From Octopus bimaculoides (taxonomy: Eukaryota), in contig NC_068981.1 in NCBI RefSeq assembly GCF_001194135.2, forward strand, positions 154,737,800-154,801,271: 63,472 bases of DNA. The letters run 5' to 3'. Below the pieces are notes generated by a model. That model saw only the letters and a list, made by a program, of their open reading frames with translations, searched no databases and was not told where the DNA came from. This document shows, piece after piece, positions 50 through 45,046 of this stretch. Within the stretch, counting starts at the first letter, position 1; each line of letters begins with the position of its first letter. The translations under genes were made by a program, and so were the position numbers.

Positions 50-146
50 TTATAGCAGTACGTACGTTTCGTACAAACTTCATTTATTCATGTAGTGAGA
101 ACACTACATAAAATGTGCAATGAAAATGTACTCCTCAGCTGCATAA
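50..146 (-). ncRNA. Type I hammerhead ribozyme (HHR-1)
   Basis: Minus strand reads TTATGCAG-CTGAGGA-GTAC..(61-nt stem II with inner ATGTAGTG/CACTACAT hairpin)..GTAC-GAAA-CGTACG-TA-CTGCTATAA. All core nucleotides are present, with a G10.1-C11.1 pair, palindromic stem III ACGTACGT, a GUA cleavage triplet and an 8-bp stem I with one bulge. Confidence 0.85.
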
Positions 147-182
147 TGGAATTTCATTTTAGAAAGTCATTTTGTAGATGTG

Positions 183-255
183 TGCAGGCCCCTAACAGAG
201 TCTGCCTCCTCAGGTTGGTGGGATATCTGGAAATAGGCTCTGTTAGGGACCTGCA
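183..255. other. 27-bp imperfect stem-loop
   Basis: 183-209 is complementary to 229-255; TGCAGGCCCCTAACAGAGTCT vs AGGCTCTGTTAGGGACCTGCA matches 19/21, and G-U pairs extend the stem. Confidence 0.8.
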
Positions 256-1811
256 AAAGTTGAAGTAGCATGGAATTCAAATCAAACAGTTTTGAATAAT
301 ATATATATATAAAGGACAAATTAAATAACATAGACCTATATACAATTGTGTGTGTGTGTGTGTGTGTGCGTGTGTGTGTGTGCGTGTGTGTGTGCACGCG
401 CGCGTGCGCGCATGTGTGTGTGCATGTGCATGTGTGAGGGCATGTGCATGTGTGTGTGAATGTGTGTATAATCATGGGTGTGTGTATGTGTGTATGTGGT
501 TTCAGCTGTATATGACTATTATCCAAACAAGAGAGTCCTCAGCACTATAGTGATAGAGTGCATTAAGATTCCAAGTTGAAGAATTCAGTATTACATACTT
601 ACTATTCTGAATTTCTCAACTTTGAATGCCACATAACAATGAAACTTAAACAGAAATATAGCTTAATTTGCTGGAAAAATTCTTCTTCTGCTTCACAAAC
701 ATCTGTAGCTCCACACTAACTTTCATCTCATTGATTATCTATAATAACTAACCTATAAACCTCACCATCCTTTTACTAGCAGAAATTTAAATCTTCCCAA
801 CACTAATTGCTATACAGCTCAACTTCTCTTAACAATAACCTACAGCATAATTTCAACAGAAAAATTAGTGTTTGCATCAATGTTAAATACACAATCACCT
901 CAACAGATTTATAACTTGACACAACAAAGTATTCCAGTTACTTTAGGTGAAGGTCTTTCTCCCTAACTTCCCCAAATATTATGATTTTCCTTCACCATAA
1001 CTACCAACATTGATTTAACTGTCTCAACTGTTATAGTGAGAACATTCAGTATAACTCTCCCCTCTCTGAAGATGTTGCTGTTGTTCAACCCTAGTTCAGC
1101 TATAAATGAGTAGACTTAAGATCAAAGACATTTCATTTGTAACTATCTGGTCTTTATAGAGATATATAGAACTACATCATTCATTTTATCTTTTCCTTTT
1201 TAATATAGGTATGGTGTAATTTGAGGGGCTTTTGACTGCTATTTCTAGCAAGTCGAGCAACCACATAGTGGCATCTCAGAAGTAATCAATTTTAGTGTCT
1301 TCAATGTTCCTTGACATCCTAGTTTTTCAAACTCCACTCCTTCTATCCTAAGATTCTGAATCTCTTTGCCATGTTTTAACTTTCTCCTTGGTTTTTGATT
1401 AATTTAGTGATAAATATTTATTACTATATCATGGTAAATGACATTGAGCATGCGGTAGTTATCAATTGGACAATACTGCAACATAATTTCAATCAGTGGT
1501 TATAAAATCATTTTACTTCACTTAGATAAATAATGCTCAAGAGAAAGATAAGAACATCCTTTGTAACTACTCAAAAGGAAATTAATATTTATTATTACAA
1601 ACTGGAACTATCATTTTCTCTAGTATTCTTTACTAAATTCCTAAGGTAATGAGATGGTAGAATTATTAGTGAGTTGGACAAGTAGCATTTCTTTGGGCTC
1701 TTTACATTCTTGGTTCAAATTTCACCAAAGCTGACTTTGATTTCCATCATGTTGAGATCAATAAAATAATTACCAGTTGAACACTGGAGTCAGTGGGACT
1801 TACCCACTCCC

Positions 1812-2934
1812 TTTAATCCTTTAGTTTCTAAACTGGCCATATCCAGCTCAAAATTTTCTACCTGTTTTATGTTCAAACTGGCCAGATCTGGCCTATCACA
1901 CCTACCTAACAATGTCAGTGTAAAAATATACAATTGCATCATTGAAATCTCAAAGCTACAAGATAATGCATGATTAATTTAAATCAATGTGAATAAATAT
2001 CAGGTCATCCCATAAGTTCTGTCAGGATTTTGAATAAAGAAAACAAGTGATCAAAAGGTTATATTTAATTGAAATTTAATCATCAATGTACTTTACTTGA
2101 TTATCTATGACTTCCTTCCATCTATTTACAATGTAAAACTCTTTTGGTTTCAAAGTGAAGAACTCTGAAATGTCAGTTTCGACCTCCTCCTGGCTTGCAA
2201 AAGTTATGTCCCCCAAATGATTTTGTAAACTAAGAAACAAATGNNNNNNNNNNGCTTGCAAAAGTTATGTCCCCCAAATGATTTTGTAAACTAAGAAACA
2301 AATGGTAGTCTGAAGGAGCAAGGTCGGGAGAATAAGGTGGATGAGGAATTTTTCCCAACCAAGCTCTTTGATCTTCTTTGATGTGATCTTTGTAGTGTGG
2401 AGTCGTGCATTGTTTTGATGAAACATCACTCCTTTTTGATTCACTAAAGCAGGTCTTTTTTTCTTCAAAGTTTGGTTCAAATGCTCTAATTGCTGACAGT
2501 GGACTTGAGCATTGATTGTTGCATTAGGTGGTAACAATTCAAAGTGAATTACTCCTTTGCAATCCCACCAGATAGAGAGAAGAACCTTTTTTTCATGAAG
2601 TTCCCTTCTCAGTTGTGGTTGAGCTTCTTCCCTTTTACCAAGCCACTGTTTACGATGTTTAACATTTCGATAGAAGATCCATTTTTCTTTGGATATTTCC
2701 ATGTTAGAAAGGGTTTTAATCAAAAAAATTTTAATTCTATTATTCTGTAAAATAATATTTAATTAGTTTAAATGTACACAAATGCATAAAAATAATTTTT
2801 TATTCCATTAGACATTCTAAAATACTATTAAATTTCATTCAATTTTAAAAAAGGCAAAATCGGACAGAACTTATGGGATGACCTGATAAATAAACATTAC
2901 ATTTGACAGAATAATCTGAATGCTAAAAGGTTAA
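1812..2934. mobile_element. piggyBac-type (TTAA) MITE interrupted by a Mariner
   Basis: Ends resemble ttaa-ccctttagcatt...aatgctaaaaggttaa. The internal sequence matches the reverse-complement copy at about 31335-31816. Confidence 0.7.
2000..2886 (-). mobile_element. Internally deleted, inactive Mariner (Tc1/mariner DDD) transposon
   Basis: TIR TCAGGTCATCCCATAAGTTCTGTC at both ends with TA target-site duplications (1998-1999, 2887-2888). ORF pieces contain KKVLLSIWWDCKGVIHFELL and HPPYSPDLAPSDYHLF. The N-terminal HTH is missing, the catalytic Asp motifs are altered (KEKW, HQNNAR) and there is a frameshift. Confidence 0.95.
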
Positions 2935-6521: not shown

Positions 6522-6599
<78 letters not shown>

Positions 6600-7500: not shown

Positions 7501-7521
<21 letters not shown>

Positions 7522-7542
7522 NNNNNNNNNNCACTGCTTTAC

Positions 7543-13590: not shown

Positions 13591-14237
13591 TATATATATA
13601 TATATATCATCATCATCATCATTTAACGTCCGTTTTCCATGCTGGCATGGGTTGGACAGTTTCACTGAGAACTGGTATGCTGGGGAGCTGTACCAGGTTC
13701 CAATCTGATGTGGCATGGTATCTATGGCTGGATGCCCTTCCTAACACCAACCACTCCAAGATTGTAATGGGTGCTTTTTACGTGCCATCAGCCACAATCC
13801 AACCCTTACTTGGCTTGACAGGTCTTCTCAAGCACAGTATATTGCCAAAGGTCTCTATCACTTGTCACTGCATCTGTGTTCAAATGGAGTTTTTTTATGT
13901 GCCAGTTATGCAACACTAGCATCATCCACAACTACAATTTCACTTGATCATGGCTGATGCCAGTGTCATGTAACAACGTGACATATATATATGTGTGTGT
14001 GTGTGTGTGTGTATACACACACACACACAAAGGGAAAGAGAGAAAAAGAAAGAAATTGCTTTACACTTGATTTAGACCTGATGCTATACATTAACACCAA
14101 ACACAGTGTCCATATCAAATGTACTTGAACTCTTTTTGCATTTTACTTAATACAGATTTCAGAAATAGACTTTCATACTTAAAAGAGAAAAGTAAAAATG
14201 AATTAAAAAAAAACGTTAAACCAAGTAAGCAACGTAC

Positions 14238-24179: not shown

Positions 24180-24620
24180 GGTATTCTGAAAGACTGCAAC
24201 AACACACCTTGCACACAGTTGTGTAGAAGGTGTAATGTTGCTGGGGAGAAAACTTGGAAATAGAATGGCGAGAATGAGAAAAAACTGGAAAAAAATGAGG
24301 CAGGAATTTTATGTTGGATGTGCAATGTTAAGGTGCATGACTGACAGAGCATAAATAAGCTAAAAGAAAAACTGTGTATTAGAAGAAGCAGCTACAGAGG
24401 GTATGATAGAAGTGGAATTTGTACAGACATGTGATGCACATGTGGGATGACAACTGGATACAGAAGTGCCACTTGATCCAAGTAAAAAGAGCCTGCAGAA
24501 GATAAAGACATGATAAGAAGTGATGAAAGCTGATCTTAGGATACAAATGCATGATTGCCTTGGACAGTACTTCTTAAGGAGAGAGAATAGCATTGCTTCT
24601 AACTTTAAATGATAATGATC
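24180..24620 (+). mobile_element. RTE-clade LINE 3' fragment
   Basis: Degenerate translation ..KWNLYRHVMHMWDDNWIQKCHLIQVKRACRR resembles the RTE C-terminal RLRWYGHVMRM..GR region. Confidence 0.65.
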
Positions 24621-27274
24621 ATCATCATTTATTGCCCATTGTCCATGCTGGCATGGGTTGGACAGTTTGACTGGGCTGGCATGCTGGAAGGTTGCATCAG
24701 ACTCCAGTCTGATTTGGCATGGTTTTCTATGGCTGGATGCCCTTCCTAACACCAACCACTTCGAGAGTGTATTGGGTGCTTTTATGTGCCATTTGCATGA
24801 CACCAGGGTAAGTTTATGTGCCACTGGCAGGAGTGCCAATTTGCGTGACACCAGTATCTGCTATGACTGTGATTTTACTCGGCTTGATGGGTCCTCTTCT
24901 CAAGAATGACATAATGCCAAGGTCTTGGTCATTGCCTCAATGGGGCCCAACACTTGAAAAGAACTCAGCCACTTTGTCTCCGTGATGCCCAATGCTCAAA
25001 AGATGTTCTTTATGTGCCACCAGCACGGGTGTTCTTGGTTTGATGGGTCCTCTCAAGCACAGCACATTACCAAAGGTCTCAGTCACCAGTCATTGCCTCT
25101 ATAAGGCTCAAAGTTCGAAGATCATGCTTCACCACCTCTTCCCATGTCTTCATGGCTCTACCTCTACTACAGAGATCAGCACTTCTTTGCACAGCTGTCC
25201 TCCCTTTATATTAAAGAGTGGAGAGCATACACATAATATATTTCTATATAACTTTTTTATTTTTTTTATATTCTTTCGGGATGAAGTTCTCTCATCTTGA
25301 GATGTTAAACCTAATGAAGGTAATAATGAGTTACTGCAAGTGGCTGGACATGACGCTGGAGAAAATCCATTCAAATCCTGCAAGTATGGGAAAATGGACA
25401 TAAACATGCTGATGATATGCAATATTTACACAGACTCATATGAATTCTGCGATATAAATTCCTTTATTCTTTTGCTCGTTTCAGTCATTTGACAGCAACC
25501 ATGCTAGAGCACTGCCTTTAGTCAAACAAATCAACCCCAGTACTTATTCTTTGTATGCCTGGTACTTATTCTATCAGTCTCTTTTGCCAAACCGCTAAGT
25601 TATGGGGATGCAAGCACACCAACATCAGTTGTCAAACATTGGTATGGGGACAAACACAGACACACACACACATATACATGACGGGCTTCTTTCAGTTCCC
25701 ATCTACCAAATCCACTCACAAGGCTTTGGTCAGCCTGAGGCTATAGTAGAAGACACTTGCCCAAGGTTCCATGCAGTGGGACTGAACCCAGGGTCATGTC
25801 GTTGGGATCAAGCTTCTTACCACACAACCATGCCTATGCCAATGTATATTCTTTACACACATCTCTACCTCAGACTGGCCAGAAAATTAAGCTGTTAAAC
25901 AACAGTTACCCTTCCTAAGCTATACCCTCACAGATTAACGTACACCAACACTTAATGACATCCTGGCCTTCCAAGACTGTGAATTTGGCAAGGACATGAT
26001 AAATCAGGGAAGGAAGTCTGATATATTTGTTATCTACAAACCCAGTTCCACAATTTTTTTTTTTGTAGCAGATTCTCAAAACTCTAACAAATAACTTTTA
26101 TGGTCTGATGAGAATGATTGGGGATAACTGAACCATTAATTAATTAATTGATTGATTCTGCATCCACATGATGCAGAAGTAGTTCCTCAGGCCATTTGAA
26201 ACATACATAAGTGAATAAAGTTATGTAAGAACATAATTCTTCAGTCTTTGTTTAAGACACACACACATACATTATCATCATTATCATCATCATTTAATGT
26301 CCATCCTCCATCTGGCATAAGCAAGATGGGTTGACAGGAGCTAGACAAGCCAAAGAAGTGTACCAGGTTCCATTGTCTGCTTTGGCATGGTTTCTATGGC
26401 TGGATGCCCATCCTAACTCCAACCATTTTACAGAGTGTACTGGCTGCTTTTTACACAGCACCAGCACCAGAAGGGGTCAACAAGTAACTTGTGAGATGAA
26501 GACCTCTCAGCTGGAAGAGGCAGTGGAATTGAAGGAGGTGGTTTTGTGCCAAACGAGAGTTTTAAAGTATAATAGAGGGATAGAGGTAGGTGTCTTACTA
26601 TAGAGGAGATACTTGGCTACTCTTGTAGGAGAGGAAGGAGAGTTAGAGAGAAAGATAGAGAGAGACAGCATGAGAAAGAAAGATAGAGAGAGACAGCATG
26701 AGAGAGAAAAATAGATGATTGAACAGTGGGGAGAATATAAGTGGCACAGAGGGGATAGAGGGAGATGTTCCATAAGAGTGTGAGGGGAGATGTTTAGAGA
26801 TGGGGAAGAGGTGACTGTAGCAAGTGATGGTGAGGGAAACTGGAGTGGTTGGAAGAGCTTTGGAGAGTATGTGGGCAGGCAGGTGAGGGATAGTGGATGG
26901 GCCTGCAGCAGGTGATAATCATGGGTGGTGGGACATGGGTTTTCGGGAAAATGGGTTGCAGATGAGTTTTGACAGAGGACAGAACTGTATGGATGGCCAC
27001 AATTTTACTTAGCTTGATGTGTCTTCTCAAGCACAGCAAACCAGATATATATAAAACAAATAATAAATGAGTATATGCATATATACGTACAAGTATGTGC
27101 ATACCTACATCTACCTGTATATATAGGTGCATATCTGGGTACAGGACGTTGCAAACAAAACGTAGACAAAAAAATAATAATAACCAGAGTACAGAAAACA
27201 CACAGGCCACATAGAGAACATTTTCCTCCATCAGCTGCCACCATTCTAACACAGGCGTTTCGAAGAGTTAGGGC

Positions 27275-27306: not shown

Positions 27307-28279
27307 NNNNNNNNNNNNNNNNNNNNNNNNNNNNNNNNNNNNNNNNNNNNNNNNNNNNNNNNNNNNNNNNNNNNNNNNNNNNNNNNNNNNNNNNNNNNNN
27401 NNNNNNNNNNNNNNNNNNNNNNNNNNNNNNNNNNNNNNNNNNNNNNNNNNNNNNNNNNNNNNNNNNNNNNNNNNNNNNNNNNNNNNNNNNNNNNNNNNNN
27501 NNNNNNNNNNNNNNNNNNNNTAAAAGCACCCACTACACTCTCTGAGTGGTTGGCGTTAGGAAGGGCATCCAGCTGTAGAAACTCTGCCAAATTAGATTGG
27601 AGCCTGGTGTTGCCATCCGGTTTCACCAGTCCTCAGTCAAATCGTCCAACCCATGCTAGCATGGAAAGCGGACGGTAAACGATGATGATGATGATGATAT
27701 ATATATATATATACACACACATACATCCAGAGGTTAAATGATGATGATGAGGAGGATACATATATTCAGTAAGAAAGAGAGAATGTTTCAATAAAGAGGG
27801 GCTCTTCATGCATTTACCCAGAACATAAGATGTAAATAATGGAAAAAAGAAAAATACACCTACAGAGGAAAGACTCAAAAAGCATTTAATTAATTACTTA
27901 TACCACAGATTAGGTTCCTATAACACTTCATGCCCAAACCAAACAAACTTTCACAAAATCAGTTGATATGACAAAACATAATATTACAAATGAAGCATAA
28001 CTTGAATATTTCTTTAAAAAAAACTTATGCAAATGCTTAAAAACAACTGCATAACATACAAAATGCAGATATAACATCTAAAATTACTGTAATATCTTCA
28101 AAAACAAATACCAGCTCTGTAACATAACCCACTGGAAAAATCAAACCAAAACTTTTGTTACACACATGTACTGTATACTAGTTCTTTAATCTTTTGCAAT
28201 GCTCAAAATATAGACAATAAAAAGAAATGAAAAAAGATTCCCTTCTTAAAAGGTCTATCAAGCGCACAACATACTGGTA

Positions 28280-29300: not shown

Positions 29301-29772
29301 TTGGCATCTAACCAGATAAAGTTAAACCCAAAGACTTTCTTCCACCAGGCACATGAGTCTTTAGGCTTATAATAAAAACAATTGGTCTGTGCACACACAC
29401 ACACACACACACAGAAACAATAAGATTGAATAGTAAAGAAATTTACTTTGTAACTATGAGGTGTTAGGTTCAATTCCTCTGTATTACATCTTGGGCAAAT
29501 GTTATTCCTTATAGTCTCAGATTAACCAATACTTTGTGAGTGAAAACAAGATTGAAATATGACAGAAGCTCATCAGGTGGACTGTGCTTGTATTTTCAAA
29601 GGTCCAGCTTTCTTACACACTGTGCCACGGTGATTCTGGTTGAGAATTACATTAAGGGTGCACATGTTTACAGTGGAATACTCAGCCACTTAAAAAAATT
29701 CAATGAGTAGGTAAGTCAGTTGATGAAACAACTGAATCCTCATTGGCTGAAATTCATGAAGATCCATATGTG

Positions 29773-29865
<93 letters not shown>

Positions 29866-30320
29866 GTTTAACGTCCGCTTTCCATGCTAGCATGGGTTGG
29901 ACGATTTGACTGAGGACTGGTGGACCAGGAGGCGACACCAGGCTCCAATCTGATTTGGTAGAGTTTCTACAGCTGGATGCCCAGAAAGTGGAAAGGATAT
30001 GAAATGGACAGACATCAGCCGGTAAACATATGTTTATTTATTCCAATGTATTGGATTGATACACACACATGTATTAGTGGTACAGGTTATCAAATAGAAA
30101 GAGCTAGTAATTGGTAATTGCAAACACAAGGGTGTGGAAGTATATAAGCATATAGGAACGAGTGATCAATTGAGCAGATGAACAAATGAACACATTGTGT
30201 ATAAAACCAAATGGGTGTGTAGGTGATAGTTCCTTACGGCCGTTTCTGCCAAGAGGCAACAAAATCTTCCAGGTAATCTCCATCTCTTCTGTCACACTAT
30301 ACCATGAAAAGGTTGGCCAC

Positions 30321-32291: not shown

Positions 32292-35020
32292 TCTTCCTCC
32301 TATATATATTCGTTCTGTTTATTCCACTTTAGCATGGGCTAGAAGAATATATTATTGGGGTATTATTTTATATCGGATATTCATCTTGTCACTGACTGTT
32401 TCACTCATTTAGAAAAATATATTGAATGTTCGTAACTGCAAGTTACATAGCTCACTTTCGAGGGCCATGCTGTTCCTACCATCATCTTTCCACGTGTGGA
32501 GTGGTATTACCCCTTTTATGGCTGCCAGCTCATTCATCACTCATCTCATGATATACACATGGTTGCACAAGACTTTCCTTGAGAGTTCTATAAAAAGTAT
32601 ATCAGAATAACAAAATCAATAACCCAATGCAACTATACCTCCTCAAAATGTTTTGGTTTTTTTACATCCTGCTGCAATTCTTGCACTTCACCTCAGTTGA
32701 GGACTTGACGAAATTTTTGTGTTCAATCTTCGATGGCTAGCATTGTCAATAATAGGCTGCTCCACTTCTTCTATAACTTCAGTGTTGGTGTCACGCCTAG
32801 CCTGGGGACTTGATATGGTTGCATCATCACTATTAGACATCCTTGCAGACTCAGCATGAAACATTGTGCCAGGTGTTGTGCTCAATTCTGATTCTGGTTC
32901 TTGTGTGTTTAGCAGGGCCAGTTGCTCAACTTCCACTAACTGCAGCAGGCAACCCTCCTTAATCCATGCAGTATTCGTTGCGGCATGTATCACATATTTT
33001 GCCTTGGATGCAAACCTTGTTGAACATGGTTTTGTGCATTACATCCTCATCTATTTTGAAGAATGGGTTTACAGCAACCCTCAATGGTCTTTTCATTAAC
33101 TTTTCGGCCAATGATAATTTACAACCACCCAAGGCACTCTGATGGTTGAACAGAATTTTGTTCAAGTAGTTGCTGAAATTCCTTGTCTTCAAATCAAAAT
33201 GCTTCCATGCAGATTTCACAGATTGTACGGCCCTTTCAGTGGTGCCGTTAGATGCCGGACTGTAAGCAGGTGTCTCAGTTTTTCTGCAACCCATTGATGA
33301 CAGCATATTCTTTAACGCAACAAATTCAGGCCAATTGTCTGATACTAAAGTTGTGGGGCACATTAAAACAAGTAAGGACCTCAAGCAGCTTGCTCTTTAC
33401 TGCCTCAGTCAAGCGATTAGGACACAAGAATGCCTCAATTCATGTTGAATAGGCATCTAACAATTACAAGAATGTTACCGATGTTTGGAACATATGCCCA
33501 ATCCATATGCACACGTTCCTAGGGTCCAGAAATAGAGCTAACTCTCTGGCAACTATTGCAAGATTTGACAAACTTCTCCACCAGGTAAGCCAACTCAGGC
33601 CACCAAATACAGAGTCATGCCTTCTTAATTGTTTGTTGAATGCCCATGTGTGTGTCATGTATTTTAGCTAATACTGCAGCTCTATAAGCTGCTGGAATAC
33701 ATGGACGATTCTTTATGATATATAAAGCCATTTTCGCATGTTAAAAAATCTTTCTCTTTAACAAATGCATGTTTCAGATTCGAAACTGATTTCCAATTTT
33801 GCTGTAAAATTCTTTCTTTCATTTTGTTACATAAAGCAACTGCATTTAGTTGTTTTCAGATGCCTTCCATCATTACAGGATCAATGTCCTGTCATGCACT
33901 GTTGCATTTGTTTAAAGAAAGTTATGTTGCCATCGTTAGTCTCATTATACCTCAATCTAGAGAGGGCATAGATGTGTGGAATACTTTTACCCAGAACATG
34001 CTTAATGAAGGGATTGTACTGCGATAGAATCAAACTCCACCAGGCTATTTTTTGTGAAGCACATTTAGATTCATCTAAATCATTCGTGAACAGGATTTTT
34101 AAAGGCTGATGATCTGTTTCCAAATGAAACTGCTTTCCCAGAAGGAAATGCCACAGTCTATCTATGCACCATAATACTGCATAAGCTTTTCCCTCTATCT
34201 TCGACCAATTTTATTGTGCCTGGCTAAAGGTGTAGTTTATGAATGCTACTGGGTGTCCTTCCTGGGATAACACCCCAGCTACTGCAATCAAGGATGCATC
34301 TACAGTGAAAGTGCTCATCTGTTCCATTGAGTACAGTTGCAAAACTGGAGCCTCCAAAAGATGAGTAATAAGCATACGGAAGGCCTTATCTTGCTCTTTA
34401 CTCCACTTAAATTCTTTAGATCTAGCTGATGAGAGTGGTTTTACTTTTTCAACATATGCCGGGACAAATCTTCTGTAGTAATTTGTCAGACCCAATATTT
34501 TGCCAAAATCTTCCTTCAGTTTAGGAACTTGTATGTCCTTTAGTTTTATTACCAATTCCTGATATGGAGAAATACCTGCTTCAGATATGTTTATTCCTAA
34601 GAAAGTCAACTTTCTTCTTCTGGGGAATGACTTTTCTTTGTTAATGGAGAATTGTACCTTGGTTAGCCATGCAACTACTGCATTTTCTCTGCTCATCAAT
34701 TTTACTTCACTACTAGCATAGATGAGGATATCATCTTGGTATACTCTGACTCCTTCGATCCCTTTTAGTAAAGTTTCCATGTGGTTCTGAAATATGCCAC
34801 TCGATTTCTTAAGGCCCATTTGAAGTTTGTTAACCAGGTACAAACCATTGGTTGTATTAATAGTGCAAATCCACCTTCCTTCCACCACTAAAGGTATTTG
34901 CCAATATGCATGCTTTAAATTGAAAGTGGAGAAAAATTTTGCGTCTGACATACTGGAGAAGATAGTGTTATTGACTGGGAAGTGAAAACAACTCTGCTCC
35001 TGGCAAGTGACTTTTGTAAA
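32292..35020 (-). mobile_element. Degenerate Ty3/Gypsy LTR retrotransposon: RT, RNase H, integrase and a possible 3' LTR
   Basis: Domain order is RT (34211-35050; LKHAYWQIPL, QMGLKKSSGIFQ, YQDD), RNase H (ETDHQPL, KHVLGKSIPHIYALSR), then integrase (VSDNWPEF, PAYSPASNGTTERAVQSVK). Frameshifts and stops are present. A PPT-like gaggagg near 32640 and an LTR-like stretch ending ..ACTACA near 32292 are weak calls. Confidence 0.9.
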
Positions 35021-35235
35021 ATGTACATGTAAACAAACACAGACATACACATATATATATATATCATCATTTGCATGTATCAGTTTCCATCAATTAAATT
35101 TACTCACAAGACTTTGGCTGGTCTGGGGCAATAGAAGAAACCACTTGCCCCAAGGAGCTACACAGTGGGACTGAATCTGAGACCACATGGTTAGGAAACA
35201 AGCTTCTCAACCACACAACAGCACTTGTAGCTTAT

Positions 35236-36567: not shown

Positions 36568-37572
36568 NNNNNNNNNNNNNNNNNNNNNNNNNNNNNNNNN
36601 NNNNNNNNNNNNNNNNNNNNNNNNNNNNNNNNNNNNNNNNNNNNNNNNNNNNNNNNNNNNNNNNNNNNNNNNNNNNNNNNNNNNNNNNNNNNNNNNNNNN
36701 NNNNNNNNNNNNNNNNNNNNNNNNNNNNNNNNNNNNNNNNNNNNNNNNNNNNNNNNNNNNNNNNNNNNNNNNNNNNNNNNNNNNNNNNNNNNNNNNNNNN
36801 NNNNNNNNNNNNNNNNNNNNNNNNNNNNNNNNNNNNNNNNNNNNNNNNNNNNNNNNNNNNNNNNNNNNNNNNNNNNNNNNNNNNNNNNNNNNNNNNNNNN
36901 NNNNNNNNNNNNNNNNNNNNNNNNNNNNNNNNNNNNNNNNNNNNNNNNNNNNNNNNNNNNNNNNNNNNNNNNNNNNNNNNNNNNNNNNNNNNNNNNNNNN
37001 NNNNNNNNNNNNNNNNNNNNNNNNNNNNNNNNNNNNNNNNNNNNNNNNNNNNNNNNNNNNNNNNNNNNNNNNNNNNNNNNNNNNNNNNNNNNNNNNNNNN
37101 NNNNNNNNNNNNNNNNNNNNNNNNNNNNNNNNNNNNNNNNNNNNNNNNNNNNNNNNNNNNNNNNNNNNNNNNNNNNNNNNNNNNNNNNNNNNNNNNNNNN
37201 NNNNNNNNNNNNNNNNNNNNNNNNNNNNNNNNNNNNNNNNNNNNNNNNNNNNNNNNNNNNNNNNNNNNNNNNNNNNNNNNNNNNNNNNNNNNNNNNNNNN
37301 NNNNNNNNNNNNNNNNNNNNNNNNNNNNNNNNNNNNNNNNNNNNNNNNNNNNNNNNNNNNNNNNNNNNNNNNNNNNNNNNNNNNNNNNNNNNNNNNNNNN
37401 NNNNNNNNNNNNNNNNNNNNNNNNNNNNNNNNNNNNNNNNNNNNNNNNNNNNNNNNNNNNNNNNNNNNNNNNNNNNNNNNNNNNNNNNNNNNNNNNNNNN
37501 NNNNNNNNNNNNNNNNNNNTATACTTGAGTATATATAAATTTAAAGAATGGAGTAAACGCATATTATAACTG

Positions 37573-37673
37573 CATACTTTTATTCCGACATATCTTTCGA
37601 AGAATTACAATTTATGTGATCCATAGGAATCGGCGATGTTAAAAATGTAAACTTCTCCTCAGGGAAAAGTATG
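37573..37673 (-). ncRNA. Type I hammerhead ribozyme (HHR-2), stem III slightly degenerate
   Basis: CATACTTTTCC-CTGAGGA-GAAG..(57 nt)..CTTC-GAAA-GATATG-TC-GGAATAAAAGTATG. Core intact with a GUC triplet and an 11-bp stem I with a 3-nt bulge; 15.2/16.2 is a G.G mismatch. Confidence 0.7.
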
Positions 37674-37782
37674 GGAACCAGCTTAAACATAAGACATTAT
37701 AATCGAATATACTTGAGTATATATATAAAAGTCCACAGTCAAATTGTCCAACCCAAGCTAGCATGGAAGGTGGACGTTAAAC

Positions 37783-37824
<42 letters not shown>

Positions 37825-38485
37825 ATATATATAAAGGTTATATTTCTAATGACTGATTTTTTGCTTGGAGAAACATCACCAGTATTTTTTGAAATGGTAA
37901 GGCATACAATGAACAGAATCAACCTTGGTATATTATTGCAATTTATTATGTTCCCTTCAAAATCATAAGCAGCTTCCTGCAGAAAAGGGGGGGAAAATCC
38001 TCCCATTTTCACTCTCAGAACCGGACTTTCTGGTACCAATGAGTAATTCTCTAACTTTGTTCCTTCTCATCCTCTCCTGTCTTTTCACTGTTGTTATAGT
38101 GATTCCTCTTTTCCATCCATTTTTAGTTTTAATTCAATTTATTTTTAGTCAGTTTTTTAATATTTTAACTTTAACATTTTTATTTTATTTCCATTGAAGC
38201 CCCAGTATTCTAGCCCTGGCTACCTATTTGATTAATTTCTTTTGTATTGCATTTTGTTAATAACAGCACTATTGGTTACAAGTTTCCAGTCACTGGTTTA
38301 CTTTATATGTGATGGTGGCAAGAGTGATAAGGGATTGTCTGTACAACTCAAGCAGAACACATATTAAAATGGAATTTCATTGAAAAGAATTGGCTTATCA
38401 GTTTCCTTGCTGATGCTCATATGATGCTGCCACCAATATACATTGCCAAAAGCTATAAATACACATGTGTGTGTGTGTGTGTGTG

Positions 38486-38542
<57 letters not shown>

Positions 38543-40698
38543 AGGAGGGAGAGAGAGAAGGAGGGAGAGAGAGAATATCTATACTTATATTTATCCTCAT
38601 TTAACATCTATCTCATGCTGACATGCATTAAACAGTTCCACAACATTCAACAAGCAAAGGACTGCATTGAATTCCAATGTTTGCATTGGCAAGGCTTCTA
38701 TAGCTGGATGCCCTTCCTAAAAGCAACTGTTTGACAGGAGTGTACTGGGTAGTATTTTTGTGACACCACTACAAGTAATATTACAAAGTAATTTGCATGA
38801 CAAGGTCCTTCAAACCAAGTGAGAGTATAGTATTGAGGGAGGTCAAAATATGATAGAAGGATAGGAACAGGTGTCTTGCTAAAGAGGAGATACAGTTGTT
38901 CATTCAGGCATAGGTAAGAACAGACTTGTGGCACTTTTTCTACAACCAGATTTTTTCCCTGCTGTCAATCTTTAACCTGCTTTCCTCACCCATCAAAAAT
39001 TGAGTGAGACATTTTGCCCACTAGACACTGTAAAAAAGACATTGTTTTTACTCAGGTAATATTGAGGACATCTGGAATGACAAATATTCACACACACACA
39101 CACACACGTGCGCGATGAGCTTTTTCTCAATTTCTCTCTACCAATTCCAAGGCCCTAATAGAATACAATTGCCCAAAGTGACACACATTGAGAGTGAGAC
39201 CCAGAACATGTGACTGCAAAACAAACTTTATAACCCCACAACCGTGCCTGCACCTCTGATGTTATTGTGACTACATACAACAGTATGGTTGCCAGTGGCA
39301 TTTTTTTTTTTATATCTTCAGTATTTGGCAAATAGCACAATTGTGAAATCGCTTCACAAGTAATATGGAAGCTAATAAAAAACATGGGTATGAGGTCATT
39401 GTTAAGCCCAGTATTTGATTGATTCTTATTTTATTTATTCTGCAAGGATAACAGCAAAGACGACCTAAGCAGGATTTGAACAGAGAACATAGAGAAGTGT
39501 AAGTAAATACTATGTTGTTGCATGTTCTACTAATTCACTGCCTTCCTATACTGCTAAATATTACTAACTATAACAGCTTTAGTAAAGTGTAAGTTGAAAT
39601 TAAGCTAATGTCTTTCATTCACAATTCAATACCCAAGAAACATTATGCTGAAATATGTAGGCAAAGTACATTGACTCCATTTGTAACATTTCAGTTTATA
39701 ATCACTCAAGAAACTCCATTTCATGGTTGGATAACAGGAATTAGGAATGTCATCCAGCCATAAGAATTAGTAGTAATTCATGCAAAATGCCATAATTTCC
39801 GATGCTTATAATTGGAAAGTGCACATAATTTTTTCTCCTTTTTTTTTAACAGAAAAGAAAAACAGAAAATTGTAACAACTATTCAGAAATGAGAAAATTT
39901 GTTAATTTTTTTTCATTTTTCCTAGTGTTTGCTATTTTAATATTTTAACATTCTTTAAAACAAAATCCATATTAGTGTGTGAACCTCTAGCTAACAAAAG
40001 AACTTGTAAGTGGTTGTTTGATCTGCTAGGATTAGACGGAAAATTCCTTCAAAGTTCACTCTATCATCTTTGAAATAAATAAAGGTACTGGAGAAAGTAA
40101 TCTTGAATATAATAATTCTAGAAGAGACAGGCTGGATGGTCACAGTTTGAATGCCAGTCCAATACACAGGAACAAAACCAAACAGTAACTACTTTGCACC
40201 AGACAGATTTCAAATCTTTAAAAGATTTTTCATTATGATACTGACACAAACATAATCTAACAGCACTATTTATCAAGACTTCACATAAATACATCACATT
40301 TCAGAATTCGTAACAACAACATCAATAATAAAAGTAGTGTGTAGCCCTTTTATCTCCTTTCTCAAAACTACAGCTCTCTAGAGAACACATTTTAAAAAGT
40401 TCAAGCACTTCATAGACAAAAGTAATCCGTGTAAACAACATAAAAATTCAAAAAATAGTGAAATACAATACAAGCAGCCTATAAGACAACTTTATGAAAC
40501 TAAAAGATGTTATCATCACACATGACATTCATTTTGTGTCAGAACAGAAAATACTTCTGCAACTACAAATGCAGAATTCAAATTCCTAATTATTATCCAA
40601 TAAGCTGTGATACAGTAAATACAGGAGGAGGCCTCATAATGAAAGACATAATATATAAACCAACACACTAGGAAAGTAAGAATGCAAAGCATATTAAT

Positions 40699-40787
<89 letters not shown>

Positions 40788-41229
40788 TACACACACACAC
40801 ATATAGCACACACATACATGAAGGCGCATGAACTAGTGATTAGGGTGTTAAAATCACCTGATTATGGGTTCAATTCCCAGGGCGAGTGGTGCATTGTGTT
40901 CTTGAGCAAAACACTTCATTATGTATGTATGTATTATGTATGTTGACTACTCATGAGCTCTTCTGCCCTTTGACAGGTCTTATTTTTCATCCCGACCATG
41001 CAACAGGTTGTACTGGATTACATGTTACCAGTAGCACTCAAGAGTGACCTCATTCTTTCATCTACCTTGGAAGCTCTGTACAAAACGATGGAAATCTGGA
41101 CACAGAAATACATCTGTGAGTTCAAAGGGCAGCACAAGCATTTGGTGGTTTAGAGTTACGCATTTGGTGCTAACAACATCTAAATAACAACACAAAATTG
41201 GCTCTTTACAAACCATTTGTCTTGCTATC

Positions 41230-41480
41230 CCTGTTGTATTCTTCTGAAACATGAACATGTTATGAAAGACATTTCAAATTGTTAGAACAATTCCTCCAAA
41301 AATGCCTTCATCACATTTTAAACATTAAATGGAGTTCTTTTACTCTAAATACAAATGTACTTGCATCTGCAGGCATTACTTCCAGTAAAACAATGATTCT
41401 GAAAAACCAAATGAGATAGTGTAGCCATATTGTTCGAATGGCAGATGAACACACACCCAAACAACTGTTTTATGATGAGC
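41230..41480 (+). mobile_element. RTE LINE 3' ORF fragment
   Basis: Translation LEQFLQKCLHHILNIKWSSFTLNTNVLASAG..SHIVRMADEHTPKQLFYDEL resembles RTE/BovB C-termini. Confidence 0.8.
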
Positions 41481-41616
41481 TTGTTTTACTGGAAGTAATG
41501 CCTGCAGATGCAAGTACATTTGTATTTAGAGTAAAAGAACTCCATTTAATGTTTAAAATGTGATGAAGGCATTTTTGGAGGAATTGTTCTAACAATTTGA
41601 AATGTCTTTCATAACA
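41258..41616. repeat. Perfect 136-bp inverted repeat with an 87-nt spacer
   Basis: 41258-41393 is the exact reverse complement of 41481-41616, checked base by base. Confidence 0.95.
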
Positions 41617-42984
41617 GTTGTTGTTTAGTTTCATGTCAACCGTTATTGGGCGGATTTATGATCAAAGCATTCCAGCCATGACCATCATGCCATTTTTTTT
41701 GGTTTGTTTTTCAGGAGTGGTGAACACAGGATTATATTGTATTCTTGTCTTTAATTTGGTAGGATATGATTTGAAAGAGATTTAGCTGCTAAAACTAGCA
41801 GATCAAATAACTGCATAGAAGCTCCTACAAAGGTAGACAAGTAGAGTGAATGTCTTGCTAAAGGATATAATGCAGTCTTTGAGTTCAGTATTTTAACCAC
41901 TCAGTAGCATTTGTTCAGGAACATACACTGTTACATTTATTTTAAAACATGTGGAGATCATAACTGAAGTACAGCTCTGTCAAAAAACATTTGGTTGCTT
42001 ATACTTTCTAGTAAAATTTAACAGATATAAATTATAAAAAAAACAAAAAAAAATTGCTATTGAAAAACAAAATGGTTCATATTTTGTCATTAAAAAAACG
42101 CTTTCAGTGCTTCTTTTAAAATATGAAGTATGTTTATTTACACAAAGAATTTCAAGAATGATTAAAAAAGAAAAGAAAATCGAGAGGTGAATTGTGTATA
42201 TCCTCATTACTTGACACTAATAGCTTCCTTTTTGTTTCTGAAGTTGAAAATGAAAGTTAATTAATATTCAGAAATAGACAATTGAATAATATTGATTTCT
42301 TACATAGGCACAATGTCTCTCATTTGTAGAATGAGTACAGAGATTGTATTATGTTCCTTGTATTAACATACACAAATTAAAGTAGGTATCTATATTCAAT
42401 GGACAACAACAATATGCAAACACTACAAAAGAGGGCAAACAATAAATAGTACATTCACCAAAATAACTGTCATGTGAAAGATACTGTAACAAACTCTGAA
42501 ACTTTTTTTGTGAAAAATAATAGAAAAATTTGAGAAAACTATCCAGACAGGATTAGGGAAGAAAATAATGTGTCTTCATTCAGTCTCCGGATTTGAGAAG
42601 AAAATAATGTCTTTTCATCTGTCCAAATATTGCAAATATATCCAAATATTGCTATAAGACACAAAAAACATTAAGAATCTACTGATAGAGGTGAAACATG
42701 TGGAAGATACAGATAGAAACTATTCTAATATTAAAAGAAACATTAAGAATAGTCAAAGAGAAAACAGGGAAAAAAAGAGAAAGAAAACATTTACACATTA
42801 CAATAAATAGCATAACAAGACAGCATCTATTCCACACAGGGCCATTAACATAGATTGAATGTATCAAGCACACTGATGCGAAACAATGTCACATGTACCT
42901 AAGATAGAAACAGATGAATGAGTTGCAGAAGAAAGCTGTACTGAAAAGTGAGATAGTAGTAGCAGTAGTAGTAACAATAATGAT

Positions 42985-44269
42985 AATTCTTTCTAACTTT
43001 GGCACAAGGAATGCAATTTTGAGAGGTCAGGGGAAATCAATTACATTGTCTCCAGTGTTCAACTGGTACTTTATTTTATGGACCCTGAAAGGAAGAAAGC
43101 AAAGTTAACCTCAGTGGGATATGAGCTATAAGTATAACAAATCGAATGAAGTGCCATAAGCATTTTGTCTGATGTGCTCATGATTCTTCCAGCTCAGTGC
43201 CTTAATAACAATAAAAATAATGATAATAATAATACTAACCTTTTCTACTACAGGCACAAGGCCTGAAATCTGGGGCAGGGATATAGTTGATTACACTGAC
43301 CCCAGTACTCAACTGGTACTTATTTTATCATCTCCAAAAGGATGAAGGGCAAAGTCAACCTCAGTGGAATTTAAACTCAGAACGTAAAGATGGACGAAAT
43401 GCTGCTATGCATTTTGCCCGATATGCTAACAATTCTGCCATTTCACCACCTTAATGATAATAATACTAATCTTTTCTATTAAGGGCACAAGGCCTGAAAT
43501 TTTGGGGAAGGGGACTAGTCGATTACATCGACCCCTGTGCTTAATTCACTGGTGCTTAATTTATTGAACCTGAAAGGATGAAAGGCAAAGTTGACTTCAG
43601 TGGAATTTGAACTCAAAAGATAGCAGCAGATGAAATACCACTAAGCATTTCACCTGGAGTGCTTACGATTCTGCCAGCTCGCTGCCTAAAATAATAATAA
43701 TGATAAATACTAATAATAATAATAATAATAATAATGATGATGATGATAATAATCCTGTCTACTATAGGCACAAGCTTGAAATTTTGGAGGAGAGGGCTAA
43801 TTGATTACATCAACCCCAGAGCTACACTGGTACTTATTTAAAGGACCCTGAAAGGATGAAAGGTAAAGTTGACTTAAGTGGCATTTGAATTCAGAATGCA
43901 AAAAGCGAAAAGAAATACCACTAAGCATTTTATCAGACATGCTAATGATTCTGCTAACTCACTACCTTTTAATGATAATGATATTAATGATTTCAAATTT
44001 TGCCACAAAGCCAGCAATTTTAGTAGTAGGAGCTAAGTCAGTTACATCAGCCTTAGTGCTCAACTGGAACTTATTTGATCAAACCCGAAAGGATGAAAGA
44101 CAAATTTGACCCTGTCTGCATTTGAACCCAGAATGGATTAAATACTGCTAAGCATTTTGCCCAGTGTGCTAACAATTCTGCCATTTTGCTGCCTTAAATA
44201 ATAATAATAATAATAATAATGGTTTCAAATTTTGCCACAAGGGCAGCAATTTAGGAGGAGGGGATGAGA

Positions 44270-44270
<1 letters not shown>
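42985..44270 (-). repeat. Head-to-tail array of five full and one partial family B SINEs in (AAT)n
   Basis: The same roughly 220-bp unit recurs, each separated by an (AAT)n tract. Confidence 0.85.
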
Positions 44271-44302
<32 letters not shown>

Positions 44303-44306
<4 letters not shown>

Positions 44307-44483
44307 AGCTCCAATTATATCATCCTAACGGAGTATTGCGCTCAAACAATATTAGCATAAACTGTGGCATTTTCCAAGGTGACTCTCTTTCACCACTAAT
44401 TTTCTGCATAGCACTAATACCACTCTCAAGTGAACTGAATAGAACAGGGTATGGCTACAAAATTGACAACAGGAAAATAAGCA
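44303..44483 (+). mobile_element. R4/Dong-like non-LTR reverse transcriptase fragment
   Basis: ISINCGIFQGDSLSPLIFCIALIPLS..GYGYKI..KIS. It starts right after an (AAT)n run and breaks off before the YMDD motif. Confidence 0.75.
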
Positions 44484-44510
44484 ACAATGTAACCTTCATG
44501 TAATTAAGGT

Positions 44511-44606
44511 ATTCTCAGCCTGATGATTAGCTAAGTTGAGCACTCCTCATTGAATAATTATTACATCAGTGGATCAGCTAGCTAAGAAACATATGTAGCT
44601 TAGATT
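44511..44606 (+). ncRNA. Type I hammerhead ribozyme (HHR-3)
   Basis: ATTCTCAGC-CTGATGA-TTAGCTA..(59 nt)..TAGCTAA-GAAA-CATATG-TA-GCTTAGATT. Core intact, palindromic stem III ACATATGT, GUA triplet; stem I is 7/9 paired and 10.1-11.1 is U-A. Confidence 0.8.
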
Positions 44607-44629
44607 TTACCTGTTCCACTCCCTCAATT

Positions 44630-44709
<80 letters not shown>

Positions 44710-44930
44710 AGCACTCCGTCGCTTACGACGTTGAGGGTTCTAGTTGATCCGATCAACGGAACTGCCTGCTCATGAAATTAACGTGCAAGTGGCTGAGCAC
44801 TCCACAGACATGTGTACCTTTAACATAGTTCTCGGGGATATTCAGCGTGACACAGTGTGACAAGGCTGGCTCTTTGAATTACATATATATAGCAAATGAA
44901 AGACAGAAGATGGAATATACAAGAATTTAT

Positions 44931-45046
44931 TATTAATCATGACAATTGTTTCGACACATCTAGCATCGATTCCTCTTGGATGGGACACTCAACAACTGGT
45001 TCAGGAGCATCTGGTGGTGCAGATGTATCTCATCAGGTGATAAATA
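44931..45046 (-). ncRNA. Type I hammerhead ribozyme (HHR-4)
   Basis: TATTTATCAC-CTGATGA-GATACATCT..(77 nt)..AGATGTGTC-GAAA-CAATTG-TC-ATGATTAATA. Core intact, G10.1-C11.1, palindromic stem III ACAATTGT, GUC triplet; the first stem I pair is a C.A mismatch. Confidence 0.8.

What the first reader, a model, noticed from the sequence alone, without database searches (positions are those of the whole stretch)
50..45046. Four sequence-unrelated long-stem-II hammerhead ribozymes in 45 kb, each next to (TA)n: candidate octopus retrozyme/Penelope-like self-cleaving RNA system
Seen: four folds with intact CUGANGA/GAAA/UH cores, tiny self-complementary stem III (ACGTACGT, A[G]ATATGT, ACATATGT, ACAATTGT) and a 57-77 nt stem II that differs in sequence in each copy. 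A TA-repeat tract lies roughly 30-40 nt 3' of stem I in every case (only a short one at HHR-2 and HHR-4). Known: minimal type I HHRs with palindromic stem III occur in Penelope-like elements and non-LTR retrozymes, cleave as dimers and usually have a short stem II. Inference: several distinct families share an extended stem II architecture and a TA-microsatellite association. I cannot establish from here whether this variant has already been described in cephalopods.
Basis: partly seen in the sequence, partly recalled or inferred. Interest (0 to 1): 0.9.

Follow-up and report, generated by a model that had tools for sequence, protein, structure and literature searches.

The report
Four long-stem hammerhead ribozyme relics
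The window holds four genuine hammerhead self-cleaving RNA motifs, each near the 3' end of a short insertion next to a TA repeat; they are best read as leftovers of Penelope-like or retrozyme-type jumping elements, a known kind, and differ from published ones in an unusually long second stem.

Summary
Four type I hammerhead motifs with intact cores lie at 59-138(-), 37587-37662(-), 44520-44597(+) and 44941-45036(-). A structural descriptor finds 4, against 0.007 per dinucleotide shuffle. Of 540 composition-matched decoy cores run on the real sequence, none of the 539 decoys gives more than 1.

All four share one design: a base-paired stem I, a 57-77 nt stem II domain, and an 8-nt palindromic stem III (2 bp plus tetraloop; 1 bp in H2). 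A (TA)>=4 run starts 35-49 nt after the cleavage site in each (background 0.03 per site). The stem II inserts show no detectable similarity to one another.

Rfam models miss all four. No reverse transcriptase (RT) or GIY-YIG reading frame lies within 2 kb upstream of H1, H2 or H4. None sits in a tandem array.

TA runs or an 18-nt direct repeat bound units of about 170-310 nt. This fits 5'-truncated or non-autonomous Penelope-like/retrozyme-type copies inserted into (TA)n, which is published biology for these elements.

The retrozyme-array reading is not supported in this assembly. "Octopus" could not be checked. The long stem II looks like an undescribed variant, but no paralogues could be fetched, so covariation and cleavage remain untested.

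The parts
59..138 (-). H1 hammerhead core. CUGAGGA at 138-132, 61-nt stem II hairpin, GAAA, stem III ACGUACGU, cleavage nucleotide A at 59.
   Evidence: Stem II folds at -20.6 kcal/mol, z = -5.4.
139..142 (-). H1 stem I, 5' strand (GCAG). It pairs with CUGC at 55-58.
   Evidence: Read from the sequence.
21..58 (-). H1 stem I 3' strand plus 38-nt tail, running up to the TA tract.
1..20 (.). (TA)10+ tract 3' of H1, cut by the window edge. Read as the insertion target.
299..311 (.). 13-nt TA run 160 nt upstream of H1. Proposed 5' boundary of a ~278-nt unit (21-298).
   Evidence: The boundary is inferred.
37587..37662 (-). H2 hammerhead core. CUGAGGA, 57-nt stem II domain (only 4+5 bp closing stem), GAAA, AGAUAUGU (G.G mismatch), C17.
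   Evidence: Stem II z = -0.7.
37663..37673 (-). H2 stem I, 5' strand (CAUACUUUUCC). It pairs with GGAAUAAAAGUAUG at 37573-37586, with a bulge.
   Evidence: The same stem appears in the predicted fold.
37538..37586 (-). H2 stem I 3' strand plus 49-nt tail.
37520..37537 (.). Downstream copy of the 18-nt direct repeat TATATATACTCAAGTATA (as read on the minus strand). It abuts assembly gap 36568-37519.
37708..37725 (.). Upstream copy of the same 18-nt direct repeat, 45 nt 5' of CUGAGGA. The pair encloses a 170-nt unit. It is either a target-site duplication or the start of a partial tandem copy.
44520..44597 (+). H3 hammerhead core. CUGAUGA, 59-nt stem II, GAAA, ACAUAUGU, A17. The 10.1-11.1 pair is U-A.
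   Evidence: Stem II z = -2.3.
44506..44519 (+). H3 stem I, 5' strand (AAGGUAUUCUCAGC). It pairs with GCUUAGAUUUUACCU at 44598-44612.
44598..44632 (+). H3 stem I 3' strand plus 35-nt tail.
44633..44700 (.). (TA)34 tract. H3 points into it from the left. A SINE-like insert (44701-44882) and then the H4 unit lie on its right.
44941..45036 (-). H4 hammerhead core. CUGAUGA, 77-nt stem II with a 10-bp closing stem, GAAA, ACAAUUGU, C17.
   Evidence: Stem II z = -1.8.
45037..45048 (-). H4 stem I, 5' strand. It pairs with 44928-44940 (4+4 bp; the first pair is a mismatch).
44892..44940 (-). H4 stem I 3' strand plus 49-nt tail.
44883..44891 (.). Short TA run 3' of H4.
45204..45214 (.). TA run 167 nt upstream of H4. 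Proposed 5' boundary of a ~312-nt unit (44892-45203). An unrelated repeat starts at 45237.
   Evidence: The boundary is inferred.

Best explanation
Each motif is the hammerhead module near the 3' end of a short retrotransposed copy. The parent is an element of the Penelope-like element (PLE) and non-LTR retrozyme world: either a heavily 5'-truncated PLE end or a short non-autonomous monomer.

**Proposed mechanism; only the first step is seen directly in the sequence**
1. Seen in the sequence: the copy ends 35-49 nt after the cleavage site, against a TA run.
2. Inferred: the element's endonuclease and reverse transcriptase nicked a (TA)n microsatellite, and copying of the RNA started a few tens of nt downstream of the ribozyme.
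3. Inferred from the short, variable 5' ends: copying stopped early. This left units of about 150-310 nt flanked by TA runs or a direct repeat.
4. Inferred from published work on hammerheads of this type, not tested here: in the parent RNA the hammerhead has only a 2-bp stem III with a self-complementary tetraloop. It would therefore cleave poorly alone and better when two copies pair into an 8-bp shared stem III, as in tandem or multimeric transcripts.
5. Inferred: the hammerhead is intact and followed by its tail. The template was therefore uncleaved, tandem or re-circularised RNA, not a cleaved linear monomer.

The solo copies in this window are most likely inert relics. The 57-77 nt stem II domain is a lineage feature with no assigned role.
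For: **Real hammerhead motifs, far above chance**
- Intact cores with stems I and II.
- 4 observed against 0.007 per shuffle.
- The true core is the only one of 540 composition-matched cores with more than 1 hit.
- 117 core-plus-TA matches in metagenome contigs include none with all the structural features.

**Retro-insertion signature**
- TA runs begin 35-49 nt after H17 in 4 of 4 copies; background is 0.032 per site.
- TA runs also lie upstream, at 160 nt (H1) and 167 nt (H4).
- An exact 18-nt direct repeat brackets a 170-nt H2 unit.
- The H3 unit, a SINE-like insert and the H4 unit are stacked around one TA tract.

**Match to published PLE biology**
- Type I hammerheads with a tiny palindromic helix III that act as dimers (PMC4209133, PMC6765202).
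- Hammerheads near the 3' end, (TA)n preferred targets, a 30-40 bp tail and heavy 5' truncation (PMC8557442).
- Reverse transcription starting internally near the hammerhead, with unprocessed RNA as the main template (PMC11167929).
- Retrozymes proposed as non-autonomous PLE derivatives that also occur as solo monomers (bioRxiv 10.64898/2026.07.22.740005).
- PLEs are abundant in octopus genomes (PMC13282606, PMC8967140).

**A long helix II is compatible with cleavage.** The minus-strand hammerhead of chrysanthemum chlorotic mottle viroid has an unusually long helix II, and the viroid's hammerheads self-cleave (PMC3705267).
Against: - No PLE-type RT or GIY-YIG frame lies within 2 kb upstream of H1, H2 or H4 on the ribozyme strand (Pfam, 0 hits). 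A motif scan of the whole window found none either.
- No pseudo-LTR or tandem structure surrounds any copy.
- The only RT fragment next to a hammerhead (44306-44500, before H3) is LINE-type.
- Another repeat family in the window also abuts (TA)n in both its copies. TA adjacency may therefore be a general habit of retroposons in this genome and not specific to PLEs.
- The 5' boundaries of H1 and H4 are inferred from TA runs only.
- Published PLE hammerheads have helix II of 6-8 bp, not 57-77 nt (PMC4209133).
- H2's stem II is barely structured.
- H3 and H4 carry non-ideal pairs next to the core.
- No paralogue, covariation, expression or cleavage data exist.
Confidence: 0.62

Rival explanations
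1. These are loci of active non-LTR retrozymes. The true genome would hold tandem arrays of ~170-310 nt hammerhead units, transcribed, self-cleaved and ligated into small circular RNAs. The assembly would have collapsed the arrays into single copies.
For: - Unit sizes of 170-312 nt fall in the published retrozyme range.
- Stem III is of the canonical metazoan type, 2 bp plus a palindromic tetraloop (PMC4209133, PMC7229834).
- The H2 unit is followed by the first 18 nt of a second copy of its own upstream flank, and then by a 952-N assembly gap. A collapsed tandem array would look like this.
Against: - Tandem Repeats Finder reports no array at any of the four sites.
- H1, H3 and H4 lie in contiguous sequence with unrelated flanks.
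- The far side of the H2 gap carries a different repeat, not the H2 unit.
- An 18-nt repeat beginning with TA is equally well a target-site duplication.
Confidence: 0.15
2. The hammerhead modules are 3' ends of LINE-mobilised elements, either a LINE family or SINE-like parasites in the manner of the schistosome Sm-alpha elements. The (TA)n would then be the usual 3' microsatellite tail or target of that LINE machinery, with no link to PLEs.
For: - A LINE-type RT scrap lies directly upstream of H3 on the same strand.
- 5' truncation and 3' simple-repeat ends are typical of LINE-driven copies (general knowledge).
- Another SINE-like family in the window also abuts (TA)n.
Against: - RT homology fades before the ribozyme. 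Neither possible continuation through H3 beats shuffled controls.
- No other piece of that LINE is in the window.
- More complete relatives of that LINE, from other organisms (L001, L002), carry no hammerhead.
- No tRNA-like head was found anywhere in the window.
- TA runs on both sides of H1, H2 and H4 point to a TA target, not a synthesised tail.
Confidence: 0.13
3. These are chance look-alikes: AT-rich, hairpin-rich repetitive DNA happens to spell the hammerhead core four times.
For: - Rfam covariance models give no hammerhead hit even at E <= 10.
- H2's stem II is not more stable than shuffles.
- One near-miss decoy exists at 29908-30034.
Against: - 4 observed against 0.007 expected per shuffle.
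- None of the 539 decoy cores on the real sequence exceeds 1 hit.
- None of 117 random core matches elsewhere shows this structure.
Confidence: 0.02
4. These are host-domesticated regulatory ribozymes, for example intronic hammerheads acting on a host transcript.
For: None specific. Conserved intronic hammerheads are known in amniotes (general knowledge).
Against: - The four copies are unrelated in sequence, lie on both strands and are each bracketed by insertion signatures.
- No host gene was recognised in the window.
Confidence: 0.03

Closest known systems
Hammerhead ribozymes of Penelope-like elements (Cervera & de la Pena 2014, PMC4209133; Lunse et al. 2017, as cited in PMC6765202)
   Same: - Type I topology, with a full CUGANGA / GAAA / UH core.
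- A tiny self-complementary helix III that implies dimeric cleavage.
- Very high sequence diversity within one genome.
- Dispersed copies in non-coding DNA.
- Placement near the element's 3' end, next to AT-rich or (TA)n targets (PMC8557442, PMC11167929).
   Different: - Published minimal PLE hammerheads have helix II of 6-8 bp, usually an extra unpaired base after A9, and often no helix III loop.
- Here helix II is a 57-77 nt domain. There is no bulge after A9 in H1, H2 and H4.
- Helix III is the canonical 2 bp plus tetraloop.
- No PLE reading frame or pseudo-LTR is present in the window.
Metazoan non-LTR retrozymes (Cervera & de la Pena 2020, PMC7229834; Li et al. 2026 preprint, 10.64898/2026.07.22.740005)
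   Same: - Canonical type I hammerhead with a 1-2 bp helix III capped by a palindromic loop.
- Non-coding units of 170-400 nt.
- Solo monomers are known to be scattered through genomes.
- Proposed dependence on PLE machinery.
   Different: - Retrozymes are defined by tandem repeats and circular RNA output. Neither is seen here.
- Their helix II is about 4 bp with loop-loop contacts to helix I. Here it is 57-77 nt.
Naiad/Neptune PLEs with (TA)n targeting and 'HHR_half_core' cases (Craig et al. 2021, PMC8557442)
   Same: - (TA)n insertion bias, a 30-40 bp tail and 5' truncation.
- Naiad remnants are reported in Octopus species.
- The authors noted eight cases where the two halves of the hammerhead core lie 35-50 nt apart and do not fit standard descriptors.
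   Different: - Naiads are reported to lack canonical hammerheads.
- The spacing here is 57-77 nt, with clear stems I and II.
Minus-strand hammerhead of chrysanthemum chlorotic mottle viroid (PMC3705267)
   Same: A natural hammerhead with an unusually long helix II, in a viroid whose hammerheads self-cleave in vitro and in vivo.
   Different: It belongs to a plant viroid, is not a type I genomic motif, and has no link to retroelements or TA repeats.

Membership tests
Hammerhead ribozyme, type I | Conserved core: C3 U4 G5 A6 N7 G8 A9, G12 A13 A14, A15.1-U16.1 and H17. | tested here: met
   All positions are present in all four copies.
Hammerhead ribozyme, type I | Three helices around the core, with helix I open-ended. 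| tested here: met
   Stem I has 4-12 bp, stem II closes with 4-10 bp, and stem III is 1-2 bp plus a loop. Stems I and II are recovered in the minimum-energy folds of H3 and H4.
Hammerhead ribozyme, type I | Match to the Rfam hammerhead covariance models at the gathering score. | tested here: not met
   No hit at gathering score over the whole window. No hammerhead hit at E <= 10 around H1, H3 and H4. The 57-77 nt insertion in stem II is the likely cause.
Hammerhead ribozyme, type I | Compensatory changes in the stems among homologues. | not testable with these tools
   There are no paralogues in the window, none in metagenome contigs, and the source genome is absent from the searchable collections.
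Hammerhead ribozyme, type I | Site-specific self-cleavage. | not testable with these tools
   This needs an in vitro transcription and cleavage assay.
Penelope-like element (PLE) | A single reading frame with a telomerase-like RT plus a GIY-YIG endonuclease. | tested here: not met
   Pfam gives 0 hits in three frames over 2 kb upstream of H1, H2 and H4. No GIY-YIG or PLE-type RT motif was found anywhere in the window. The RT scrap before H3 is LINE-type.
Penelope-like element (PLE) | Pseudo-LTRs formed by partial tandem or inverted copies. | tested here: not met
   No direct or inverted repeats link or surround the hammerheads. The only exception is the 18-nt repeat at H2.
Penelope-like element (PLE) | A hammerhead with a very short palindromic helix III in the terminal region. 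| tested here: met
   Stem III is ACGUACGU, AGAUAUGU, ACAUAUGU or ACAAUUGU. The copy ends 35-49 nt after the cleavage site.
Penelope-like element (PLE) | 5'-truncated insertions with a 30-40 bp tail, preferentially in (TA)n. | tested here: inconclusive
   TA adjacency is significant and flanking TA runs or a direct repeat are present. Another repeat family here also abuts (TA)n, so this feature is not specific to PLEs.
Non-LTR retrozyme | Tandem repeats of 170-400 bp, each carrying a type I hammerhead. | tested here: not met
   No tandem array at any site. H2 is inconclusive because a 952-N gap follows the start of a possible second unit.
Non-LTR retrozyme | Expression as small circular RNAs. 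| not testable with these tools
   No transcript data are available.
Hammerhead-bearing SINE (Sm-alpha type) | A tRNA-like Pol III promoter head upstream of the hammerhead. | tested here: not met
   ARAGORN finds no tRNA-like gene in the window. A and B boxes were not searched separately.

The most novel reading that the evidence does not exclude
This genome, presumably a cephalopod's, carries a large and so far undescribed structural class of type I hammerheads. In it helix II has grown into a 57-77 nt, freely evolving domain, while the core, a canonical 2-bp palindromic helix III and a conserved 35-49 nt 3' tail are kept. The class would ride on short TA-targeting non-autonomous retroelements. 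It would be invisible to Rfam models and to the RNAMotif descriptors used so far. It might still cleave as dimers and yield circular RNAs.
Probability: 0.25. Interest if true: 0.6.

Novelty: new variant of a known kind. Interest (0 to 1): 0.4.

Why it matters
If the long-stem-II design is a genome-wide class, current hammerhead censuses undercount ribozymes in cephalopods. Those censuses rely on Rfam models and on descriptors that limit helix II to a few base pairs. The same blind spot may apply to other invertebrates.

The class would also give a clean marker for the 3' ends of Penelope-like or retrozyme-type insertions, and for their preference for TA microsatellites.

It would offer a natural test of how much helix II can grow before dimeric cleavage fails.

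If these are only four decayed relics, the finding is ordinary transposon debris of a known kind.

Tried and rejected
**Searches that gave nothing**
- Rfam at gathering score on the whole window, and at E <= 10 around H1 and around H3/H4: no hammerhead hit.
- Pfam on three-frame translations 2 kb upstream of H1, H2 and H4: nothing.
- ARAGORN for tRNA-like SINE heads: none.
- Supplementary sequences of Craig et al. 2021: not held. Lunse et al. 2017: not held.

**Attempts to reach paralogues from the same genome**
- Homologues of the LINE RT scrap and of the Gypsy pol were at most 73% and 40% identical. All came from unrelated assemblies.
- An exact-protein look-up of a window ORF found nothing.
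- The two fetched loci, L001 and L002, contain no hammerhead.

**Metagenome pattern scans**
- The strict pattern gave 0 matches.
- The looser pattern gave 117 matches, all failing the structural filters. They serve only as an empirical null.

**Ideas I dropped**
- That H3's CUGAUGA box is the decayed YMDD codons of the LINE RT. Two mutually exclusive alignments were possible and neither beat shuffled controls.
- A fifth hammerhead at 29908-30034(+). It has U at G12, and its CUGAGGA belongs to a SINE consensus.
- Homology between the four units outside the core. MAFFT and local alignments show none.
- A shared YTCCAY motif in three tails. It is post hoc and weak.
- H2 and H3 as inverted ends of one element. 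No inverted repeat links them.


Full report

A regular-expression scan for CUGANGA ...
- H1 (-)59-138
- H2 (-)37587-37662
- H3 (+)44520-44597
- H4 (-)44941-45036

Reading each site out shows a complete hammerhead core and a stem I that pairs across the motif:
- H1: 4 bp.
- H2: about 11 bp with a bulge.
- H3: 7+5 bp.
- H4: 4+4 bp.

Stem II is closed by 4-10 bp and spans 61, 57, 59 and 77 nt. Stem III reads ACGUACGU, AGAUAUGU, ACAUAUGU and ACAAUUGU, that is 2 bp plus a self-complementary tetraloop (1 bp in H2).

There are three small blemishes. H2 has G.G at positions 15.2/16.2. H3 has U-A instead of G-C at 10.1/11.1. H4 has a mismatched first pair in stem I.

None of the motifs, stems or tails crosses an assembly gap. 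Only H2's downstream flank runs into one, at 36568-37519. The 45-kb spacing is therefore an estimate, but the motifs are not assembly artefacts.

**2. Is it more than chance?**

- The structural descriptor gives 4 hits in the window. Over 300 block-wise dinucleotide shuffles the mean is 0.007 and the maximum is 1. The reversed sequence gives 0.
- Real repetitive DNA is richer in hairpins than shuffles are. I therefore ran 540 composition-matched versions of the two core boxes on the real sequence, 539 decoys plus the true core. No decoy gives more than 1 hit; the true core gives 4.
- A much looser scan (stem II 8-160 nt, any stem III) finds the same four and nothing else. The common stem II length class is therefore not imposed by the descriptor.
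- A core-plus-TA pattern run on metagenome contigs returned 117 matches. None combined a palindromic stem III with stems I and II. This is an independent empirical null.
- The descriptor was designed after seeing the sites, which inflates the ratios somewhat but cannot account for them.
- Rfam does not recognise any of the four, at gathering score or at E <= 10. The long insertion in stem II is the obvious reason.

**3. The TA association**

A (TA)>=4 run starts 38, 49, 35 and 49 nt after the cleavage nucleotide. A random position and strand has this property with probability 0.032, so four out of four is about 1e-6. Long tracts occur only at H1 (cut by the window edge) and H3 ((TA)34).

TA runs also lie upstream, which changes how the tract should be read:
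- H1: 160 nt upstream.
- H4: 167 nt upstream.
- H2: bracketed by an exact 18-nt direct repeat, TATATATACTCAAGTATA, enclosing 170 nt.

This gives units of about 278 nt (H1), 312 nt (H4), 170 nt (H2) and at most about 150 nt (H3). The H3 limit comes from a LINE-type RT scrap at 44306-44500 that ends just before stem I.

Around 44.5-45.2 kb the layout is: LINE scrap, H3 unit (+), (TA)34, a SINE-like insert, (TA)4, H4 unit (-), (TA)5, then another repeat. This looks like repeated insertion into one TA microsatellite.

The TA tract therefore reads as an insertion target or target duplication, not as part of the ribozyme.

**4. What surrounds the motifs**

- No tandem array covers any hammerhead.
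- BLAST finds no similarity among the four units within the window. Their stem II inserts are no more alike than shuffles.
- Three-frame Pfam scans of 2 kb upstream of H1, H2 and H4 find nothing.
- The window's only coding remnants are a mariner-like transposase, a Ty3/Gypsy-like pol and the LINE scrap.
- No tRNA-like sequence is present.
- Stem II is a convincing hairpin in H1 (z = -5.4), moderate in H3 and H4 (about -2), and essentially a large loop on a short closing stem in H2 (z = -0.7).
- Predicted folds recover stems I and II for H3 and H4. For H2 the predicted dimer shows an intermolecular stem III. These are thermodynamic predictions only.

**5. Best explanation**

The anatomy matches what is published for Penelope-like elements (PLEs) and their non-autonomous relatives:
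- Type I hammerheads with a minute palindromic helix III, thought to act as dimers (PMC4209133, PMC6765202).
- A hammerhead near the 3' end, a 30-40 bp tail, strong 5' truncation and (TA)n as preferred target (PMC8557442).
- Reverse transcription that starts internally close to the hammerhead, mainly on unprocessed RNA (PMC11167929).
- Retrozymes proposed as PLE-derived non-autonomous units that also occur as scattered monomers (10.64898/2026.07.22.740005).
- PLEs are a sizeable fraction of octopus repeats (PMC13282606, PMC8967140).

I therefore read the four sites as solo 3'-terminal modules of such elements, inserted into TA microsatellites and probably inert now. Because each hammerhead is intact and followed by its tail, the template must have been uncleaved, tandem or re-ligated RNA. 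That last point is inference.

My confidence is about 0.6. No PLE gene, pseudo-LTR or paralogue could be shown. Another repeat family here also abuts (TA)n, so TA adjacency alone does not identify the mobilising enzyme.

**6. Rivals**

- *Collapsed retrozyme arrays.* This stays open only for H2, where the start of a possible second unit meets a 952-N gap. The far side of that gap carries a different repeat.
- *LINE- or SINE-borne hammerheads.* The RT scrap before H3 suggests this. However, homology does not demonstrably continue into the ribozyme, the rest of that LINE is absent from the window, and its relatives in other organisms carry no hammerhead.
- *Chance.* Effectively excluded.
- *Host-domesticated ribozymes.* Nothing supports this.

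**7. Comparison with known families, and novelty**

In how it would work, this resembles the dimer-dependent type I hammerheads of PLEs and retrozymes.

As for membership:
- The hammerhead core and topology tests are met.
- The Rfam model test is not met.
- The PLE gene and pseudo-LTR tests, and the retrozyme tandem test, are not met in this window.
- Covariation, cleavage and circular RNA output cannot be tested here.

The clear difference from published descriptions is helix II. It is 4 bp in canonical metazoan motifs and 6-8 bp in PLE motifs (PMC4209133), but 57-77 nt here.

There is some precedent. The minus-strand hammerhead of chrysanthemum chlorotic mottle viroid has an unusually long helix II (PMC3705267). 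Craig et al. mention half-cores 35-50 nt apart in Naiads that fit no descriptor (PMC8557442).

Full-text searches found no description of cephalopod hammerheads, but the library is incomplete.

I rate this a new variant of a known kind, of moderate interest. The identification of the organism as an octopus remains unverified.

Noticed in passing
41258-41393 and 41481-41616: A perfect 136-nt inverted repeat (100% complementary) with an 87-nt spacer. It is either a recent foldback duplication or an assembly artefact.
   Followed up: no
32900-35089, minus strand: A Ty3/Gypsy-like pol remnant (RT with YQDD, RNase H, integrase pieces), including a 292-aa stop-free stretch. The best database relatives are only about 40% identical.
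   Followed up: partly
2233-2762, minus strand: A mariner-like transposase remnant, interrupted by the 10-N gap at 2244-2253.
   Followed up: no
29778-29918, 37730-37833, 27628-27707, 13597-13673, 24609-24673: A SINE-like repeat family. Its copies start with a (TA)n(ATC/GAT)n compound microsatellite followed by CGTTTAACGTCC.... One truncated copy lies just upstream of the H2 unit.
   Followed up: partly
44701-44882 and 29595-29742: Another repeat family. Both copies end in ...CAACAACA directly against a (TA)n run ((TA)34 and (TA)19). TA adjacency is therefore not unique to the hammerhead units in this genome.
   Followed up: partly
44306-44500, plus strand: An isolated 65-aa scrap of a LINE-type reverse transcriptase (GIFQGDSLSPLIF...), up to 73% identical to proteins from unrelated assemblies. 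It is flanked by (AAT)11 upstream and the H3 unit downstream. No other part of this LINE is in the window.
   Followed up: yes
29908-30034, plus strand: A hammerhead-like decoy: CUGAGGA, 106 nt, UAAA, ACAUAUGU. It has U at G12, and its first box lies inside the SINE consensus. I judged it a chance match.
   Followed up: yes
Tails at 37538-37586(-), 44598-44632(+) and 44892-44940(-): The 3' tails of H2, H3 and H4 each contain YTCCAY 15-24 nt before the TA junction, and end in similar T/C-rich ...TCTTTAAATT- or ...CTCAATT-like strings. This could be a shared 3' recognition signal. The pattern was found post hoc and is statistically weak.
   Followed up: partly
43226-43983 and 61177-61578: Two-copy tandem duplications: a SINE-like unit of 236-278 bp at 75% identity, and a 201-bp unit at 91% identity. 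Neither carries a hammerhead.
   Followed up: no
36568-37519: The largest assembly gap (952 N) lies inside the finding's span but was not in the program's list. It begins right after H2's downstream direct-repeat copy.
   Followed up: partly
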